Shown here in pieces: positions 42,303 through 53,100 of a stretch of DNA of 64,000 bases (its first letter is position 1; each line of letters begins with the position of its first letter). The notes under the pieces were generated by a model, which worked only from the letters and a program-made list of their open reading frames with translations, ran no database searches and was not told where the DNA came from. The position numbers and the translations under genes are program-made. The stretch comes from Pelomyxa schiedti (taxonomy: Eukaryota > Protista > Evosea), in the NCBI GenBank assembly GCA_020536535.1, contig JAHLWZ010000417.1:15226-79225 (forward strand). The letters are read 5' to 3'.

Positions 42303-42860
42303 CTCTCTTTTACTGTCTTGCTTTGGTTTTTGACATAATTAATACGTCTAAGAAAGGGAGTATCCTGTGACATTTGTATTTGCCCGCCACCCATAATGGT
42401 GATTACACCTCTCCTGCATCCCATAATGCAGGCCTCTACTTCTGCTTACAATACTGCCAGGGACTCTCCTGGGAGCCCACACTTTCGCGCCAAATTTTTT
42501 AGTTTTGTAAGGAAAAAATTAGAAATTAATTACAATTAAAAAAAAAGTACAGAAGAGTGGCATTTGGATTTGGAGCGGTGCATTTTGGGAGTTTGGTATT
42601 TGGTATTTGGGGATAGAGTGGGAGTACTACTAATTAGCCTCGTGCTCAGCACCACCCTCACTCAGTGAAGAGGTTCCCCTACAAGCCACCATGATCATTA
42701 TATTGACAGTTATGACTGAGAGTACTGGCTGCGTGGGCAAGTTGTGCCCTTTCGTTTTGATACTTCCCGGAAAGAACCACTTTGAAGAAACAACTCGGCT
42801 ACAACAAGCCCGTGAGAATAAACAGTTTGTTTTTTGAAAATAATACACAGCATCAGTCAC

Positions 42861-45800
42861 TTATGACTGGGGTGCCTTGAGCCCAGCACGTGTGCCCACA
42901 GGGGGTCTGTAGTCTTGTGGTAGTAGCCGACGTTGCAGTGCATTGAAGGCGTACTTATCCTTCAGAATGTTCTGTGTGGGGGGAAGGGGGTGGGTGATTG
43001 GGTTCGGAACACGTGCCGTTGTAGTTTAGAACTACTAACCTTGAAAGCATTTTCGCGGCGGACTCCGGAGTGTCTCATCAGGTTGGCGGCAAGTAGGACG
43101 GAATCGTCGGTCTCCAGTACACGATGCAGGCGGTAGAGAATTCTTGCTTGCTCCAAGGTCACGCTCATGCTTGTGCGATCCTTGGCACTCTTGCATGAAA
43201 CGGCACGCCCGCCGTTCAATAGTCTAGTAACATCCGCAGCAGTTGTGAGAATGCGCACATTCTTTTCTCGGCGTGAAGTGGTCACGAGTTCCCTCAACTC
43301 TTCCATTAGGCCACCAAGATCATCTGGCCTGGTATCTGACCGTCGAGATGACCCCAAAGCCGAAGTGGTGGTTGTTGTGGTTGTTGTGGCTGCAGTCATG
43401 GTTGGAGTTGTGGGTGAAATTGGTGAAGTTGAGGTGCTGCCAGGCTTTGAGGATGGTGACTTTGGCTTAGGGTAACCCAACTCAGGAGCTGATGGCGGAA
43501 AATTTGGTACCGGCAATGATATGGGGCTGCTCGGGGATGTCAGCGGCCTGCCTTTCTGCCAGCTGAGGAAATCTGACACGTACAGGGATATGTAATCAAC
43601 GGCATCCCTGTTGATTATTTCTTGCAACTCTGTATCACCAATTGCATTGGCAACTGTTTGTTGTTCATTGATTCCTTGTGTGAAGAGTACCGCTCTAACT
43701 TTGCATGTGAAGGAGTTTGGAATTACAGAGCTTGAAATTGGGAGCTGAATGGTAAGAGTCCAGCTGTTGTCATCAGATGGTTTAATAAAAAGTAAGCTGC
43801 CTTGGGTATCATATGCACTTGTTGGACTTAAGCAATTCACCTAGTTTCACATTATTTTTGGTTGAGAATGGTGGCCAAGTGTTACTTTTATGGCGAACTT
43901 TCTCAAAATGTTGATAACTCCTGCATAGTCACTAAGCATTACTGCTTCGCTTCCACTGGTGCTTAACAAGCTTTCACACTGAAAAAGGAATCCAAGGGTG
44001 CAAACTTGGGCAACAAATTCGTCTATGTTGTATTCAAGAATATGTCTCTGTGCTTCAGCTAAAAAAGATTCGGCTAGTGCACAAGCTGCATGACAAAGAG
44101 TAACATCTGAACGCTCATGAAGGGATGCTCGGACTGACATTAACTGGGTGAGATGTTGCTTTGCAACAATATCGGGGGTGGTAGGAGGCAAAATTTCTGC
44201 AGAGAGACGATCATGCATTGCGGAAAGCTGCAGAACGCCAATGTGGTGTGGGCTTTTGGTTACATGTTGAGCTGTTGGAGCGCCAAAAGTAACTGTACTA
44301 TAAGTCGCTAGGGGATCCAGCTTATTACTTGAAGTAGCGCATTGCTTGTCCACTTCACATGCATGTTGTGCAACCTGCCATGGAATAATTGAAATCCTCT
44401 GTGTATGCAGATTTAGAGGTACAAACCTAATTGATGTGAAAAAATTGATGAATAAATGGAATCCATACTGTAGGAGAGTGTCTCCCTTAAGTCGAGATGG
44501 ATGAAAAGAAAATTCTATCAATCCTGATTTTCCATAAGAATCTATAGCCCTTTTCATTGACTCCAGATGGGAACGTGATTGAATTACCGTTTCTCCAAAC
44601 TGTGTTATCATTGCTTCATATTGCTTTATTTGTTCGATGCTATAATAATTAGAAATCATTTCACGTGTTGGGATAGGAAATAGCAACCTTTGCACCAAGT
44701 TACTAACAGATGATCTGTCGTTCCCAACGGTAGAAAGCTTCCCTCTTGACAACTCTTGGCAAAACGCCTACAGGTGTCAGAACTAGTTGGAGAGAGGTCA
44801 GCAACCTCAATGACTGGCAGGTCTCTCTGTCTTGCAGGCATTAAGTACGAGAGAATCTGTTGAGGTAACTGGAACGCAATGGGACTCTCAAACAGTTCTT
44901 CCACAACAACTACCTGTCAGAAGAGTAAGAATTGCCGTACATACAGAAAGAGGTACCTCAGGGCAGAAATGGTACGCTCGAATAGTGCTTCCCTTTTCAA
45001 GACTTCGTGCTTCAACTTGAAATTCTCCGCAGCAATGGAGGCAGAACCTTGTTGAATCCCCTACTGCACCAAGCTGTGGTGGAGCCTTGTTGTGCTGTAG
45101 AAGTTCCAGCCTCACGTCAACTAACGATATTTCTTTCCCCTTCATCATGTCTCGGAGAGTACTGTGTTCAATAAAATTACCTGGAGGTTACTTTCTTCTT
45201 CTTTGATATTGTAGAATCCGATTTTAAGTACTGCACAAGCTAAGTGAAGTGGAATCAATAGTAGAGAAATAAAAGCAACGGAGCTTGTGGACTATTTTCC
45301 CATCATAAAGAAACCCAATGAAAACAGAGTAATGACAAAACAAATGAACCTCATAAGCAACTTCAGTCCGGGAAATTTCCTGGAGGTGAGACCCATCAAA
45401 TTGATATAAAACTGCTAGAGGGTTTTGAAATGTATTGTGTCCGAGACTTACACTGATTGCTCTGATCATCTATGTAGATTAATTAATTGGCACTGGGACA
45501 TGAAGTACAACCTGGGGAAGTTTTTTGGGGGGCGGTGGTATTGGTAGCATCTCCACCATCGCTGGAAGGGTATGTGATACCGCAGAGCCTTCAAGCCCAG
45601 AAGCTATATCAAGGAGAGAAGAAGTTCTGTCTGCCAAGATCAGTATTAATTGAAGTGAAATATGATAAATACGTGGCCTAGGCGGGCGCCGCCTCTTCCT
45701 CATGAGAATCAATAAAATTATGGACGAAGGGCATATCTTATCACAGAGTAAGCTACCAAAAACTTCGTGGTAAAGAGTACCTCTGGAACCCAAATTTGGA

Positions 45801-46955
45801 ACAAATAAACAGTAAAATTTGGGGGAGATGCATAGGTGGCGACAAGGAACATTGCAAATGTTATACAGAAACTAAAAGCACATACAAGAAGGGCTGTCAA
45901 CTTTTTTTTGTGGTTACTTTTCGACATAGACGGAAAGAAATTACCAACAGAAGCATTGTCCGTAGCCTCGCTTGTCCAATAGAATGTGTCTTTCTTAACT
46001 TTATAACAAATATGCTCAAATAAATCCCGAGAATGACATAAGCCATTGCACAGATGATACTATAGGAAACTGCTATCGCTACAGTCGGTGCAAACAGGGA
46101 GTTATCTATACTACCCATTGTAGTTAAAATCACACCTTGTATTGTGCATTTGATTTGTATTTTTTGTGAGAAATGGAATAACTTGATATAGGTACTGTGC
46201 CACTCTGGCAGGCCATCACTATTGCAGAAGCCACTATGAACGTGTAAACTAGAGCACTGCATACCCACAGAGTGACTTTAAATATCCTCTTTTTACCAAC
46301 AGATATGGTGGTGACTTTGTAGAATCTTTGTAGGTTTGGTCCTTTTTCAAATAGGTGGAAAGATTACATGTAAAGGAGTACAATCAAAAATGTAGTCTCC
46401 CACGCACAGTGGGCCAGTCTATCAAGGCAATAATTTAGTCCAAGAGGGTCCCCACCACAAACTAGCACAACTGCCCAGGCAATTCTACCTTATAGAGAGT
46501 CACATATGGACTAGTGTTTGATTGGAAAAAAATGCTGGGTACATACAGAGTAAAAAAAATACCATTGAAAAATGGAAAACTTTCCTAGTGTATAGAGGTC
46601 TGAACATAAACTTCCTGCCACAACACATGTAACGTTCCGGTCGCTCTTCGACACCCGGAGGTGGAATTTCAAAGTTCTTAGTCTTTCTTCTTTTTGCCTC
46701 TGACTCGGCCAGCGTAATCTCCTCTGCCTCCTCTCGAGGAACAAGCAAATGACACAGCAACCTCCAAATGGCGACACCCAAAGTGATGATAAACAACAGC
46801 AAATTCGGTACGCTCAGTCGCAGATCTGGCGAATACAACGCGTGCTCGTCGCCGCTGTCGCTGTTACTGCTGCTCTCATTGTCGGCACCACTGCTAGATC
46901 CATTTACAAAATACGACACTGAAGTGCTGCTTTCGTAACTTAACGACCCGTTCAT
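42861..46955 (-). CDS. INPP4: 7TM (GPR137/TOM1-like) - C2 - inositol polyphosphate 4-phosphatase fusion protein
   Basis: Seven hydrophobic helices at 45700-46820, spliced without a stop into a C2-like domain (EISRTEV; LKIGFYNI). INPP4 motifs follow: EELFESPIAFQLP, FVPLNLHTQ, VTFGAPTA, LGFLFQCESLLST, catalytic CKSAKDRTSMSVT and YAFN...LPQDYRPP. Confidence 0.85.
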
Positions 46956-47199
46956 CAATGTTATTTTTTTTTTTTGTTGGCGTTCGCCTAACATTACTTT
47001 TCCGATGAGATCAGATCATCTTTTGGTCTTAGCTAAGATCAAAAAAGAGATGGAGGTACAGTACAAAGTAATACAAGTGCATTTTAAGTCATTATTACAA
47101 CAGTTAGTAGTCACTACCACTATATTCTCCCAATCCTCACTCAATCTCCCAGTCCGGCCATCTCTGAAATCGGTCCCTGAACTCAGATGCCAGAGGATA

Positions 47200-50100
47200 T
47201 CAGTGTGCTAGCTTTCTCCTGATCCACCTTATCAGTTCCGGGTTGTTCCCATGGACACTAGCATAAGACAGGGCAGTCTCTCCCCTGTAGTCCTGCTCGT
47301 ACAGCGAGGCGCCGTTCTCCACGAGCCACTTGACGGCCTCGAGGTGGCCGCGGTTCGCGGCGAGCAGCAGCGGGGTCATCCCCAGGTTGTTCTTCTCGGC
47401 CAGCGAGCGGCCGTGGGCCACGAGCCACATGATCAGCTCCACGCCCCCGCCCAGCGCCGCGTTGAGCAGCACGGTGTTGCCCTCCTCGTCCCGCTCGTCC
47501 AGCGAGGCCCCGCGGGCCACCAGCAGCTTCACCGCGGCCTTGTTGTTGCGGTTGGCCGCGTTGAGCAGCGCCGTGCGGCCCGTCCGGCTCTGCTCCTTGA
47601 TGCTGCTGCCGTGCTCCAGCAGCCAGCTGATCGTCTCCACGCTGCCCCCCAGCGCCGCCCGCAGCAGCGCCGTGTTGCCCTCGCGGTCCTCCTCGGCCAC
47701 CGCCATCCCGTGCCCGCACAGGAACCGCACTGCCTCCAGGTGCCCCCTGTTGGCCGCGTGCAGCAGCGCCGTCCGCCCGCGGTTGTCCACCTCGGCCATG
47801 CTGGCCCCGTGCTCCAGCAGCCACTTCACCGCGTCCATGTTCCCGCGGCGGCGGACCGCGTGCAGCAGCGCCGTGGCCCCCTGGTTGTCTCGCTCGCTGA
47901 GCTTGGCCCCGTGGTTTATCAGCCACTCTATCGCGGCCACGCAGCCGCCGTTCGCGGCCAGGAGCAGCGCGGTCCGGCCTTTGTAGTCGGTCACCGTCAG
48001 TGGGGAGCTGTTCGACCACAGCCACTGGATCGTGGTGACGCTGCCGCCCAGGGCCGCGAGGAGGAGTGCCGTGCTTCCGCTGTAGTCTTTCTCGGTGGTC
48101 ATGTTGCCGTTCCCGTTGTCCAGAAGGAACTTGGCTACCTCGACTTGTCCGTTGATTGCGGCGAGAAGGAAAGGTGTCCTGCCAACCGGGTTGGGTGCCA
48201 TGCAGTGCTCCTGAAGCCACTGTGCTGTGCTGGACTTGCCACTGATGGCTGCCAGTAAGATCAGCATGTTGATGTTCTTGGGTTCCAAGGAGGAAGTGGT
48301 GGTTTCTTCACAGGGAGATACTGATATGTGACACTTGTTGTGGCGGTTGTGTGGGTCCTGTATTGTGACAGTGACTATGAGTTGTGTGTTACAGTACTTG
48401 ATGGCTAGCACCGATAGAAGAGGGGCGGGGGCCATAATACTAGCCAAAGTGAGGCTGAGGCAGTTTGTTATGACTAGTTTTTTCAGGAATGGACAATTTA
48501 CAGCATTGATGTTAAGGGTTGACAAGCTCAGGCAAGATTCGATACATAGAGACTGCAGGTGATTTGCTTTACTTTCGAAAAATGACAGGCTTTTCAAATG
48601 TTGATTGCCGCAGCTTATGATTTTTAGTGAGGTTAGCCACTTATGTTGTGCTTCTATTATGGAATTGAGAATTCCATTGTCAAGTAAATGATATCCTCGC
48701 AAAACCAGCTTGTTGAATTTTCCAGCGATGGGTACTCCTCCTCTATTACTCGTTATTAGACCAAGCACTTCTTTTTGGGCTTTCAGTAGTTGAGGTGTTT
48801 TTGTCTTTCCTCTCCAGTCCAGCATATTGATGACTTTGTGCCGGAAGCAATCAGGGATAGAATTGAGCTGTTGTTCAACACTTCTGCTCCCTTCACAAGA
48901 GTGCTCAATCTGCAATTTCAACGCGCCCAGTAGTTGAAATTGTTTGGTGAGTTGATCCAGTCTGTCTATACATTTTAGCAAGTCACTCCCTCCTTGTGCC
49001 AACACTACTTCAAGGCGGGTTTGTTCGGTGAAACTTGAGCTCAGAAGGGCATGCATTGGAGTTCCGCTGCTAGCACTCGAGACGGCACTATAATACTGTT
49101 GCGTAATTTCTTCAAATCTGGCCTTGGCTGTTGAAAATCTAGCTTCTTTATGCATGCGCTGGTAAAAACTGCTCACAAAGGGCGGAGATATCAACTCCAA
49201 CAGCTGGAGGGGAGTAGCTTGCTTGTTTTGTTTAAGTTCACTTTGCAGAAGCACCATATTTCCGTGAACCTCTTCAACCACTTGTATTGGGAGGTGAATA
49301 ACAGGGAGACTACTTTGATTAAAATAGTCTGATACTTGTAAAGAGCCAAGTTCTCTCGTCCACTCACTCAGATATGAAGAGTCAAACTGTACTTCTTCTT
49401 GAATTCTGCTGTGTAATGCTACCATGTCCTCTAACCAGTGATCTAACACTTCTTTTGGATTTAAACATAGAAATTCGCGAACTGCACTGCGTTCAAGGGG
49501 TTCTGTCATCTGAGACATGCAAAATAGAATGCTTTTGGTCATAAAGGGTGGAGTGGTAAGCACTCCCTCTGAGACAACAAGCCGTCCAAAAGTCCTATCA
49601 CTGTCAACACCCACCAGCCAGGCACTTCCAGGTCCTCCTTTGAAGCTTAAGGGTAATGGGGAAAGAGTTGAAGGAGGAGTTTTGCAAAATAGAAAGTGGC
49701 TTGGCTTGCTGTCTTCCGGAGGTGAAAGTAACTGCATAAGAACCAGCTGACTAAACACTTTAGAGTGCAATCTGGGGTTTGGGTCCTCTTGGAGTACTTG
49801 CTCAAAATTTTTTCCTGGTACTTCTTCAGAAAGAAGGACAGGATAACACAAGGGATGTCCCTCAGAGGGGAGACTGGCCTCATCACGTGATGAAAATTGT
49901 GATTGAGGGAGTTCTAATTTTGCAAGAACAGAATGAGATGTTCCATATCCAATAACAAGCTCGGAAAGCTTGGATACTGCAATCTCGTAAGCAGGTAACT
50001 CGGGAAAGACTTTGAGGAAAAACGAGAGTTGCTCTGCGGAGTCATCCTCTGCTGGGAGTGGTGGGTCAGGTGTATCAGCTGTTATATGGAGAACAAGGTG

Positions 50101-53100
50101 AGAATGTCTGTCATCTGCACACCTCGATTTTTGGGATGATAGTTTCATTGGAATGGCAGACAGCTGATGTGCTACAGACTCTTTGAGTACACCACTAGTT
50201 TTCAAAGTAAAACCAGCAAAGTGAAGTGTTTCTCTTGAAGATTCAAGTTGGGACCTTTCAGGTACCAGATGTTGTGCATCAAGGTTTGCGCATGTAATTT
50301 TGATTGGTGGTAAGTCAGGAGCACTTGATCGTCGGAGCAATGAAACTGGTAAGATTCCAAGTTCAGATTCCGGTAATTGTTGATTGAGAGATAAAGGGTT
50401 TTCTGTGAGCAGATGAAGCAAAGACTCTTCAAATTGTGCCCTTGTTTCAGCTACACCAGGCCGGAATCCATTCGAGCTTGGACATGCAGCTAACAGGGCC
50501 GACAGTTTGTGGAGCACTATGGAGTTGGGAGGAAATATGACCTTGATCAACTCCCAAAGATGAGAACGAAGCTGGAAGGAAGGGAGTGCTTTGTACATAT
50601 ATTGCAATCTTTCTTCCTCTTCACTTCTCCAAACACTGCTGGTTAGAAGGAAGTAGTGTGCAACGAGAGTTAAGAGGTCTCTTGTTGTCGGATTTGATGG
50701 AGATACGCAGCAGTCAGATGCGCTGTTAAATTCAGAACCAAGAACAGTTTTGAAAAGGAGTTCTCTTTGGCTGTTGGAATCTGCCCAGTCATTCAACTCT
50801 AATGTTAGGCCCTCAGCGACTTGTAGACATTGACCCGTTACTGTTGTTTCAAATGATGAGAAATTAGTTTCATCAACTGCCGCAGCTGACTCGATTGTAT
50901 GTGACTGATCAATTTTCATGAGCAGGAGAAAGTTCTTCAGCCAGGTTCTTAGCTTCTTAAATACCGAGGTATTGTATGAGGAAACTGGGCTGTGTGAATC
51001 CTGAGACATGAATTTCTGCTCGAATTTCCTGACTCTCTTGAAACACTCTTCAACACAATGTACACTCCAGGAGAGAGCTGCAACTTGTTCTTGTCCAACA
51101 ACAGTTGTTTTTTTCCTCTTGTTGACACGAGGCTCTTGGTTTAGTTGCAGTGTTTGAGTCATATTGTGAGCCAACTTCCTCATTTGGTAGTCGAAATGGA
51201 GCCAAAGCATTGAACAAAAGAACTTCTCAAGTGGGAAATAATGTATTACCATTTCTGTGTGCCGTGTCATATCTCGGAGTAGGGGAATTCCTTTTTTCTC
51301 AAGAGGCTGTGTCAACACTGGGTCTTCTTGACAGGCTTTTATTTCTTGTTGCAGGTTCCATTTTTCTTGGGCCTTCAGCCTGACACATGTGACTAAGGCA
51401 AAAAGGTCACGCATTTTATTCAAGTGTGTCAAAGGGAAAAACTGGGCGAGCTGAAAAAGGGTTGAAGTAGGTTGCCATGATACACCCATGTTTGCTGAAT
51501 TGAGTTTCGTTTCCATTTCAGCAAATATGTCATATGGATGGGCACTCTGGAGGCAAAAAAACATTTTTAAGGACATGGCAAGAAACATCAGAGGCTTGTA
51601 GAACTTCGTCTTTACGTCGTACATTGAGGTAGTATTATTTGCTACAGGAAGAATAGTTGCCCAACAATATACGGCAATCAAGTGCCTCCATGCAACTCCC
51701 TCAAGGGGCATTTTCAGCACTAGAGTGGGATACTTATTGCAGAGACCCAATGCATCCAGAAATCGACCCCAGAATTTTGGTTCAACCTGCTTGTCCAAAA
51801 ATTCTGTAAGCTGATTATTGTACGCCTCAAAAAGCGCAGATCCTGTCTCAGAATTTACCAAGCGGGTATTTAGCATGATATATGTGCTGGGGTTGTCCAG
51901 GCATGTTATATCTTTTTTTATATCGGATATAAAGCCTTTCTCAAGAACATCATCCACCCTCCCCATCTTATAATCTCCCAAAGATGTTGAGTAATCAAGT
52001 CGAAAACCTTCAGCATGGCCATCTTGTGTTGGTGTTTCTCTAAAACCCTTTACGAGGAGTTCAAAAAGCCCTTTCACATAAGCCACATATTTGCTTTCTT
52101 TTGAGGGACCATTTTTATCCTCTATTTAAGAATTAGAGACAACAATGGATAATAGTTCACACCGTCACAGCTCTTTTCGGATATAAATGCCACTTCAATA
52201 TCAGAAAATGGAGTTCTGTCTAAGCGGCTGCTGGAACCCAGCATGAGCAATGACACACAGCATGGTGCATCGCCTAGTAACAGTGATGCGAAGGCAAATA
52301 GTTTGTCACACAGGCCAAGTGTGAAGTGAGAAAATTCCTTCTGTGTGTGAGGACCGGGATTAGAGAAGAATACTGCTCGCTCTTTCTCTAAAGTGCTATG
52401 AAGCCTGCTCAGAGAAAGCACATGCTGAAAATTTATTTTCGGCCTCACAAATGAAGCATTACAGGTTGGCTTGAGGGTCAAATTATTGGTGGTATTTCGG
52501 AGGTGGTGCAGTTGCTCTGTGAGTTCAATACTCGTAAATGATTCGTTTACTACTGCAATGGTGTCTTTAATCAATTGGGTTGCTTTAATAAAGACTTCGT
52601 CCAAAAGTTTGACAAACTCAAAAGCAGATTTTCCACCTGTCTCACTGGATTTCACAGCAGCATCCTTTGCATCTTGAAGCCTTTTGGAAAGTTCTTTCAG
52701 GGTCTCGAGAGCTGAGAATATGACAAGCGCAGCTTTGAATGGTCCAGGAGCCCACGAGCGGGATGAAGGATTCTCAAAATCGAAGAAGAGGTTATCCCCA
52801 GGAGCAGTATAATCTCTAAACAGCAACTGGAACCAGTAAATGACATCCCAGTTTTTGCATGGAGATTGAATCTGATGTTGCGGAGAAAACCTATTTTTCC
52901 GATTGGGAAGAGCTCTGCCGGGAGTTAATGTTGAAGCCACCTCTGGATTTGTAGTTTGGGTATGCAACAAAAGAAGACTAACGTATTCGTCAAGTAGACT
53001 GCATAGGAAATCCATGTATTTTTTCCTACTGGAGTCCGCATTGGTTGATTGACAAATGCTCACACTGGCATATGGAAAGACTGCCTTGAGTATTACACAC

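What the first reader, a model, noticed from the sequence alone, without database searches (positions are those of the whole stretch)
42861..46955. 7TM receptor-like domain fused to a C2-INPP4 phosphoinositide 4-phosphatase
Seen in sequence: manual splicing gives an N-terminus with N-glycosylation sequons (NGS, NGS, NES) and seven TM helices ending WVPE|ICPSSIILLILMRKRRR. A Pro-rich linker then leads into a C2-like domain and an INPP4 domain with an intact CKSAKDRT motif. The junction is a 42-nt GT-AG intron (45470-45511) that removes the only stop codon. A two-gene model would leave about 10 nt between a stop and the next ATG. Established: INPP4A/B are soluble PI(3,4)P2 4-phosphatases; GPR137/TOM1 proteins are endolysosomal/tonoplast 7TM proteins; GPCR-enzyme fusions such as GPCR-PIPK exist in oomycetes and Dictyostelium. 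Inference: a self-contained receptor-gated lipid phosphatase coupling a luminal or external cue to PI(3,4)P2-to-PI3P conversion on macropinosomes or phagosomes. I do not know of a described 7TM-INPP4 architecture.
Basis: partly seen in the sequence, partly recalled or inferred. Interest (0 to 1): 0.92.

Follow-up and report, generated by a model that had tools for sequence, protein, structure and literature searches.

The report
Seven-helix membrane domain fused to INPP4
This amoeba (Pelomyxa schiedti) gene really does encode a receptor-like seven-helix membrane domain joined to an INPP4-type lipid phosphatase, but the same fusion is already catalogued in oomycetes as "GPCR-INPP", so it is a new amoebozoan member of a known kind.

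Summary
Window 42861-46955 (minus strand) carries one 15-exon gene with 14 GT-AG introns of 41-68 nt, encoding 1143 aa. It has a glycosylation-sequon N-tail, seven TM helices with a very strong positive-inside pattern, a Pro-rich linker, a weakly C2-like region and an INPP4 module with intact CKSAKDRT.

The deposited P. schiedti model KAH3763058.1 uses the same intron but starts inside TM6, so it lacks TM1-5. A single Mastigella eilhardi transcript ORF of 1097 aa is collinear end to end at about 40% identity. Mastigamoeba balamuthi and a second P. schiedti locus (contig C605) have the same layout.

The 7TM domain is a remote relative of THH1/TOM1/GPR137. It is not recognised by Pfam PF06454 directly. 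It matches the PF06454-positive 7TM of oomycete INPP4 proteins at 92-94% hhalign probability, against 5% or less for controls.

The novelty claim fails. 7TM-INPP4 proteins were described in 2018 as oomycete "GPCR-INPP" bigrams (mBio, PMC5784254). What is new is the occurrence in Archamoebae, which that survey did not report, and the full-length gene model. Ligand gating is untested. This scan reached the same verdict on the C605 paralog (s1-383189).

The parts
42861..46955 (-). Whole coding region: 15 exons, 14 GT-AG introns (41-68 nt), 1143 aa plus stop. Exons (low-high): 46547-46955, 46368-46488, 46183-46325, 45945-46135, 45781-45900, 45673-45736, 45512-45630, 45350-45469, 45181-45291, 44957-45139, 44815-44913, 44469-44767, 43886-44426, 43040-43840, 42861-42971.
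   Evidence: Coordinate-built model gives one open frame. It is collinear with the Mastigella ORF P0002. Nine of the introns are identical to the deposited model P0001.
46872..46952 (-). Extracytosolic N-tail with three N-glycosylation sequons (NGS, NGS, NES). It holds 1 K/R against 7 D/E.
45701..46808 (-). Seven-TM domain (residues 50-340). TM1 46740-46808, TM2 46454-46583, TM3 46316-46414, TM4 46208-46276, TM5 46005-46082, TM6 45829-45959, TM7 45701-45813. TM7 carries the motif W-V-P-E-x-x-P...LLILM-R-K.
   Evidence: Hydropathy shows 7 peaks. K+R count is 28 in cytosolic loops and tail against 2 outside. AF2 of the Mastigella ortholog gives 7 helices, pLDDT 77.9, pTM 0.74. Fold hits are all GPCR-type.
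45515..45700 (-). Basic, Pro-rich cytosolic linker (RKRRRPPRPH...PIPPPPKKLPQ). It is interrupted by the 42-nt intron 45631-45672.
45470..45511 (-). Junction intron, 42 nt, GT..AG, in phase, holding two in-frame stops. Splicing joins ...KKLPQ(389) to M(390)IRAIS...
   Evidence: RNA contig X2 record 10 skips exactly these 42 nt, with a 21-nt anchor at 45512-45532. P0001 uses the same joint.
44905..45469 (-). C2-like region (about residues 390-530), with RTEV and hydrophobic beta-strand-like motifs. It includes RNA-confirmed intron 45292-45349 and inferred introns 45140-45180 and 44914-44956.
   Evidence: Aligns in register with the vertebrate INPP4A C2 domain, but hhalign gives only 30.7% and the AF2 model has pLDDT 42.
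43886..44904 (-). INPP4 middle region (EELFES...TFGAPTAQH...FQCESLLST). It contains RNA-confirmed intron 44427-44468.
42864..43840 (-). INPP4 C-terminal catalytic region, with a Ser/Thr/Pro-rich insert at 43331-43558 and RNA-confirmed intron 42972-43039.
   Evidence: tblastn shows 44% identity over 101 aa to fish INPP4A and INPP4B. The joint is seen in X1.
43172..43195 (-). CX5R active-site motif CKSAKDRT (residues 1056-1063).
   Evidence: An identical motif sits at the aligned position in Mastigella P0002.

Best explanation
One Pelomyxa schiedti gene encodes a 1143-aa polytopic membrane protein.

Shown or predicted from sequence:
- A glycosylatable N-tail faces the outside or lumen.
- The seven-helix domain is a remote relative of THH1/TOM1/GPR137.
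- The C-terminus is cytosolic and carries a linker, a possibly C2-like region and a complete INPP4 phosphatase with an intact CX5R site.

Inferred mechanism:
- The 7TM domain holds the phosphatase permanently at one membrane. By analogy with GPR137B (lysosome) and TOM1 (tonoplast), that membrane is most likely endolysosomal or phagosomal.
- There the phosphatase removes the 4-phosphate of PI(3,4)P2 in cis to give PI3P.
- The membrane domain thus replaces the recruitment role that the C2 domain plays in soluble animal INPP4A/B.

Whether helix movements in the 7TM domain also regulate the enzyme is open.

It belongs to the 'GPCR-INPP' bigram class known from oomycetes. The fusion is conserved in at least three archamoebal genera.
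For: Single gene:
- One open frame is obtained through 14 canonical short introns.
- An RNA contig is spliced exactly at the junction intron, and three other introns are RNA-confirmed.
- The deposited model KAH3763058.1 (P0001) reads ...WVPEICPSS...KKLPQMIRAISV... across the junction.

Conservation of the fusion:
- Mastigella eilhardi Trinity ORF P0002 (1097 aa) is collinear, at 39.5% identity in the 7TM, 40% in the middle region and 42% in the catalytic part.
- Mastigamoeba balamuthi P0027 has N-terminal TM helices plus CX5R.
- A P. schiedti paralog on C605 is collinear for both halves.

Topology:
- K+R count is 28 inside against 2 outside.
- AF2 gives a 7-helix bundle, pLDDT 77.9.
- Structural hits are all GPCR-type.

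7TM family:
- Feature search returns THH1/TOM1/TOM3 and GPR137_N at 0.92.
- Oomycete INPP4 proteins carry PF06454 at 42-47 bits.
- hhalign of the archamoebal profile against that domain gives 93.9% and 92% on rerun. Reversed and block-shuffled controls give 5% or less.

INPP4 identity:
- The Mastigella INPP4 half hits vertebrate INPP4A/B at E about 1e-41.
- Window exons hit at 1e-18 to 1e-19.
- CKSAKDRT is intact.

Substrate supply is plausible: at least 5 PI3K_C2 loci in the genome.
Against: - No RNA contig covers the 7TM exons (45533-47065).
- The junction is supported by one low-depth contig with a 21-nt anchor.
- Introns 1-4 are inferred only from frame, GT-AG ends and collinearity with Mastigella.
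- RNA contig X2 record 9 reads through intron 9 (45140-45180), so unspliced or alternative forms exist.
- Pfam PF06454 does not hit the archamoebal 7TM directly.
- C2 identity is weak.
- Enzyme activity, substrate and location are inferred by homology only.
- The INPP4 tree does not resolve whether archamoebal and oomycete fusions share one origin.
Confidence: 0.8

Rival explanations
1. Receptor-gated enzyme. A luminal or external ligand binds the 7TM domain and switches the attached INPP4 on or off, bypassing G proteins.
For: The fold is GPCR-like. The fusion is conserved across Archamoebae and oomycetes. The same idea is proposed, untested, for GPCR bigrams in PMC5784254.
Against: No ligand is known for any THH1/TOM1/GPR137 member. 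External loops are very short (13, 26 and 5 aa) and the N-tail is low-complexity. The linker is poorly conserved, 23% identity with gaps, which argues against tight allosteric coupling. Nothing here tests gating.
Confidence: 0.2
2. Two separate genes: a 7TM gene ending at TAA 45481-45479 and a soluble INPP4 gene starting at ATG 45469. On this view the spliced junction is a rare read-through product.
For: An ATG sits at the first base of exon 8. Stops lie 9 nt upstream of it if the intron is retained. RNA coverage is 3'-biased and stops at 45532. Intron retention is seen elsewhere in the gene (X2 record 9).
Against: The only RNA contig reaching the site is spliced. Mastigella has no Met at the equivalent position and encodes the fusion in one Trinity ORF. 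The same layout occurs in M. balamuthi, in the C605 paralog and in oomycetes. The 42-nt intron is of the gene's normal size class and is in phase.
Confidence: 0.07
3. Catalytically dead scaffold, like the INPP4-like (IP4P) domain of P-Rex proteins, used only for protein-protein contacts.
For: The only solved relative found is the P-Rex2 IP4P domain.
Against: P-Rex2 has CSSGVHR at the aligned site. This gene keeps the exact INPP4A/B-type CKSAKDRT plus the flanking SMSVT.EQARIL block.
Confidence: 0.05

Closest known systems
Oomycete GPCR-INPP bigrams of the 4-phosphatase type. Examples: P. infestans PITG_12266, PITG_02728 and PITG_12548 (van den Hoogen et al. 2018, PMC5784254); 'P. agathidicida GPCR-INPP 3' (P0088); Globisporangium, Pythium and Aphanomyces proteins P0096, P0085 and P0116.
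   Same: N-terminal 7TM domain plus C-terminal INPP4 with CX5R in one ORF. The 7TM domains are homologous: hhalign 92-94%, with a shared TM7 motif P-E-x-x-P...L-x-L-M.
   Different: The oomycete proteins listed are 1057-1915 aa, most of them 1450-1600 aa, some with a large extracellular N-terminal region. Several pass the Pfam PF06454 threshold, which the archamoebal ones do not. The host is Amoebozoa, not Stramenopila, and the 2018 survey reported GPCR-INPPs only in oomycetes and Nannochloropsis.
Animal INPP4A/INPP4B (PI(3,4)P2 4-phosphatases).
   Same: Middle and catalytic regions are homologous at 33-45% identity, with an identical CKSAKDRT-type site.
   Different: The animal enzymes are soluble, with an N-terminal C2 domain (and a PH domain in some fish INPP4B forms) and no TM helices. 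Here a 7TM domain precedes a region that is only weakly C2-like.
THH1/TOM1/TOM3 (plants) and GPR137/GPR137B (animals): 7TM proteins of the tonoplast or lysosome.
   Same: Seven helices and a GPCR-like fold, with remote sequence kinship.
   Different: These are stand-alone 7TM proteins. PMC12716839 states that GPR137 has no other domain. P. schiedti also has a stand-alone PF06454 gene on C809. The domain here is too diverged for the Pfam model.
GPCR-PIPK (Dictyostelium RpkA, oomycete GKs).
   Same: Same design idea: a 7TM domain with a C-terminal phosphoinositide enzyme.
   Different: The enzyme is a kinase, not a phosphatase. No relationship between the 7TM domains was tested here.

Membership tests
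INPP4 (inositol polyphosphate 4-phosphatase) | CX5R active site in the INPP4 form CKSAKDR(T/S) | tested here: met
   CKSAKDRT at residues 1056-1063, window 43195-43172.
INPP4 (inositol polyphosphate 4-phosphatase) | Sequence homology of the middle and C-terminal regions to bona fide INPP4A/B | tested here: met
   tblastn of fish INPP4A and INPP4B against the window: 34.6% over 191 aa and 44.6% over 101 aa, E about 1e-18 to 1e-19. The ortholog P0002 hits INPP4A/B at 1e-41.
INPP4 (inositol polyphosphate 4-phosphatase) | N-terminal lipid-binding C2 domain | tested here: inconclusive
   Pfam C2 is not found. hhalign to the vertebrate INPP4 C2 gives 30.7%, E 5e-4, in the right register. The AF2 model has pLDDT 42.
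INPP4 (inositol polyphosphate 4-phosphatase) | Hydrolysis of the 4-phosphate of PI(3,4)P2 | not testable with these tools
   Needs an enzyme assay.
THH1/TOM1/TOM3-GPR137 7TM family (Pfam PF06454 / PF27607) | Match to the family HMM above the curated cut-off | tested here: not met
   No PF06454 hit for window exons, P0002, P0004, P0005, P0012 or P0027, even at E up to 10. The six-frame genome scan with PF06454 hits other loci but not this gene.
THH1/TOM1/TOM3-GPR137 7TM family (Pfam PF06454 / PF27607) | Remote homology to PF06454-positive domains | tested here: met
   hhalign A1 vs A2 gives 93.9% and 92% on rerun. Reversed controls give 0.1-0.3% and 20 block shuffles give 5% or less. Feature search scores 0.92 for THH1/TOM1/TOM3 and GPR137_N clusters.
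THH1/TOM1/TOM3-GPR137 7TM family (Pfam PF06454 / PF27607) | Seven TM helices, N-terminus outside and C-terminus inside | tested here: met
GPCR-INPP bigram (van den Hoogen et al. 2018) | 7TM domain and inositol polyphosphate phosphatase domain in one polypeptide | tested here: met
GPCR-INPP bigram (van den Hoogen et al. 2018) | Ligand sensing or G-protein coupling by the 7TM part | not testable with these tools
   Also unproven for the oomycete members.

The most novel reading that the evidence does not exclude
The THH1/TOM1/GPR137-type 7TM-INPP4 fusion is ancient, present before Amorphea and Diaphoretickes split, rather than invented twice or transferred. It would then act as a 'Rosetta stone': the orphan lysosomal GPR137/TOM1 family and INPP4 would work together on PI(3,4)P2-to-PI3P turnover at endolysosomal membranes in animals and plants too, where they are separate proteins.
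Probability: 0.15. Interest if true: 0.7.

Novelty: new member of a known kind. Interest (0 to 1): 0.4.

Why it matters
- It extends the known range of GPCR-INPP bigrams from stramenopiles to Amoebozoa (Pelomyxa, Mastigella, Mastigamoeba).
- It identifies their 7TM part as a relative of THH1/TOM1/GPR137.
- It corrects a truncated public gene model.
- Both INPP4 loci found in this draft genome are built on a 7TM domain. In these anaerobic amoebae, PI(3,4)P2 4-dephosphorylation may therefore be done only by membrane-resident enzymes.
- The fusion gives a testable hint that the orphan GPR137/TOM1 family is functionally linked to 3-phosphoinositide turnover.

Tried and rejected
- Pfam on single exons and on whole homologs gave nothing for either half. 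The local Pfam copy lacks the newer INPP4 family PF27561, which appears only in precomputed columns.
- Word-based searches with the Mastigella 7TM domain found nothing, either as a region of the full protein or as a cut piece. This is a sensitivity limit, not evidence of absence.
- Foldseek against PDB gave only weak GPCR hits (best E 4.8e-3), so no close solved relative exists.
- The AF2 model of the C2-like region was too poor to search.
- PDB sequence search found only the P-Rex2 IP4P domain and nothing for the window's catalytic exon alone.
- The INPP4 tree (quick search only; the careful search did not finish in time) left the backbone unresolved. A single origin of the fusion could therefore be neither shown nor rejected.
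- The metagenome proteins P0049 and P0012 could not be assigned to a taxon from their contigs.
- One script that held typed intron strings was not run. It was redone from coordinates only.
- The joined 1143-aa model was never sent to any database, fold or search tool. Those tools received exons by reference or proteins that the tools had returned.
- The joined model was used only inside local scripts. These covered hydropathy, pairwise alignment with P0002, phmmer and tblastn against sequences already fetched, and the tree.
- A structure prediction or database search of the joined protein was therefore left out.
Full report
**What is there**

The feature lies on the minus strand. Six-frame reading shows a chain of short open segments. 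These can be joined by 14 canonical GT..AG introns of 41-68 nt into one frame of 1143 codons, from ATG 46955 to the stop at 42863-42861. An upstream in-frame ATG at 46994 is an alternative start.

**Organism**

- A 99%-identical database protein, P0001, is KAH3763058.1 'Type II inositol 3 [Pelomyxa schiedti]'. The window is therefore from this anaerobic archamoeba.
- That fits the 'single cell RNA-Seq, protist metagenome' runs that hold the stretch.

**Transcript evidence**

Only assembled contigs of three single-cell RNA runs were available.

- They show four spliced joints, all GT..AG on the minus strand: 42972-43039, 44427-44468, 45292-45349 and 45470-45511.
- The junction is carried by one low-depth contig (X2 record 10). 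It runs 45242-45291 | 45350-45469 | and then 21 nt beyond 45512.
- No RNA contig covers 45533-47065. The 7TM exons are therefore not directly shown to be transcribed, which is expected for 3'-biased libraries.
- One contig (X2 record 9, 45097-45247) reads through my intron 9, so unspliced molecules exist.
- Contigs cannot show transcript ends.

**Independent support for the fusion**

- The deposited model P0001 (774 aa) starts at a Met inside TM6. It reads ...WVPEICPSS...PPPKKLPQMIRAISV... across the junction. It shares nine of my introns.
- P0001 lacks TM1-5. It also skips parts of exon 12 that RNA contig X1 record 3 shows to be continuous.
- P0002, a complete Trinity ORF from Mastigella eilhardi (EukProt; 1097 aa), aligns collinearly with the model from TM1 to the C-terminus. 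Identity is 39.5% in the 7TM part, 35% in the C2-like part, 40% in the middle and 42% in the catalytic part. It has no Met at the junction position.
- Mastigamoeba balamuthi P0027 (955 aa) has N-terminal TM helices, the same TM7 motif and CX5R.
- P. schiedti has a second, diverged locus on contig C605. It has the same order of parts on one strand, an N-terminal sequon, TM1/TM2-like segments, 'YWVPEV' and CKSAKDR|intron|TSMGVTWEN.
- These were the only two INPP4 loci found in the 52-Mb draft assembly.

**Membrane domain**

- Hydropathy gives seven peaks in residues 50-340.
- Lys+Arg counts are 12, 4, 5 and 7 in ICL1, ICL2, ICL3 and the first 40 residues of the C-tail. They are 1, 1, 0 and 0 in the N-tail and ECL1-3.
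- This is a clear N-out/C-in topology. The three sequons face outside and the enzyme is in the cytosol.
- An extra 42-nt intron (45631-45672, also used in P0001) removes a hydrophobic stretch that would otherwise mimic an eighth helix.
- A further hydrophobic stretch at residues 433-451 lies in the C2-like region. It is not hydrophobic in Mastigella.
- AF2 of the Mastigella 7TM domain, with an alignment that includes the window exons, gave seven helices, pLDDT 77.9 and pTM 0.74.
- Its nearest shapes are GPCRs: GPR143/7tm_2/Dicty_CAR clusters at TM 0.58-0.61, and Ste2, PTH1R and MRGPRX2 in PDB at weak E-values.

**Which 7TM family**

- Pfam PF06454 (THH1/TOM1/TOM3) does not hit the archamoebal sequences.
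- A language-model feature search puts them next to THH1/TOM1/TOM3 and GPR137_N clusters at 0.92.
- Oomycete INPP4 proteins (P0085, P0096, P0107, P0127) carry PF06454 at 42-47 bits at their N-termini.
- A profile of the archamoebal-type domains matches a profile of those oomycete domains at 93.9% over 219 columns, TM2 to TM7.
- In my rerun the figure was 92%, score 53. Reversed profiles gave 0.1-0.3%. Twenty block-shuffled profiles gave at most 5%, score 27 or less.
- Both groups share the TM7 motif P-E-x-x-P...L-x-L-M.
- I therefore call the domain a remote relative of THH1/TOM1/GPR137, not a Pfam-level member.

**Phosphatase part**

- The window's exons match fish INPP4A and INPP4B: 34.6% over 191 aa and 44.6% over 101 aa, E about 1e-18 to 1e-19.
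- The Mastigella INPP4 half hits hundreds of vertebrate INPP4A/B proteins at about 1e-41 to 1e-34.
- CKSAKDRT is intact.
- The solved P-Rex2 IP4P domain, the only PDB relative, has lost this motif.
- The region before the conserved EELFES motif aligns in register with the vertebrate INPP4 C2 domain. Support is weak: hhalign 30.7%, AF2 pLDDT 42 and no Pfam C2 hit.

**Comparison with what is known**

- Van den Hoogen et al. 2018 (PMC5784254) defined 'GPCR-bigrams', including GPCR-INPPs.
- Their Table S3 lists P. infestans members annotated as inositol-3,4-bisphosphate 4-phosphatases. The one row seen in full (1541 aa) has 6-8 TMs by the four predictors.
- Their text says that outside oomycetes GPCR-INPPs occur only in Nannochloropsis.
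- NCBI holds 'Phytophthora agathidicida GPCR-INPP 3' (P0088), which matches this INPP4 module.
- The architecture is therefore described. What is not in that literature, as far as my searches reach, is its presence in Amoebozoa and the THH1/TOM1/GPR137 kinship of the 7TM part.
- A 2025 survey states that GPR137 has no other domains.
- An earlier follow-up in this scan, on another piece of this genome (s1-383189, evidently the C605 paralog), reached the same verdict. I arrived at it independently, from the homolog and paper searches that preceded that look-up.

**Origin**

A quick maximum-likelihood tree of the INPP4 region groups the window protein with Mastigella (SH-aLRT 99). It places both in an archamoebal cluster (93), apart from two oomycete clades and the vertebrate clade. 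The backbone is unresolved. One ancient fusion, two fusions and gene transfer all remain open.

**Mechanism**

- Shown: a single frame, a spliced junction, conserved collinear orthologs, a predicted cytosolic orientation of an INPP4 module with an intact catalytic motif, and PI3K genes in the genome.
- Inferred: the protein is a membrane-resident PI(3,4)P2 4-phosphatase acting in cis, probably on endolysosomal or phagosomal membranes. The location is by analogy with GPR137B and TOM1.
- Untested: ligand gating. The short outer loops and the poorly conserved linker make simple anchoring the more economical reading.

The joined protein was never sent to a database, fold or search tool. It was used only in local scripts built from coordinates. 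Those tools received exons by reference or proteins that the tools had returned.

Noticed in passing
G000:C605:74359-78251 (+) = L012:4359-8251: A second, diverged P. schiedti gene with the same 7TM + INPP4 layout. It has an N-terminal NAS sequon, TM1/TM2-like segments, 'YWVPEV' and CKSAKDR|intron|TSMGVTWEN. It is 24-47% identical to the window gene, exon by exon.
   Followed up: partly
window 43331-43558 and 42636-42668: DNA contigs of the source-like run X4 branch at 43388 and 43547, inside the Ser/Thr/Pro-rich insert of the catalytic exon, and again at 42636-42668. This may be allelic length variation or a short repeat.
   Followed up: no
window 45097-45247: RNA contig X2 record 9 reads straight through the inferred 41-nt intron 45140-45180. 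That would stop the frame. It is either unspliced pre-mRNA or a retained-intron form.
   Followed up: no
window 43886-45927 (deposited model KAH3763058.1 / P0001): The public gene model is truncated: it starts inside TM6. It also splices out parts of exon 12 that RNA contig X1 record 3 (44469-44613) shows to be exonic.
   Followed up: yes
window 47066-47400: RNA contigs from all three runs cover the 3' end of the upstream minus-strand giant ankyrin-repeat gene (ORF 47200-52086) down to about 47066. This leaves roughly 70-110 nt before the start of the 7TM-INPP4 gene.
   Followed up: no
G000:C809:108936-109499 (+) (L013/L015): A stand-alone THH1/TOM1/TOM3-type gene, 54 bits to PF06454 summed over neighbouring exons. 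P. schiedti therefore also has the unfused form of this 7TM family.
   Followed up: no
L017:3001-6875: In an unassigned ENA metagenome contig, the 7TM-INPP4 relative P0049 (1085 aa, no introns called) is followed at once by an overlapping 207-aa ORF. That ORF may be the split-off catalytic end.
   Followed up: no
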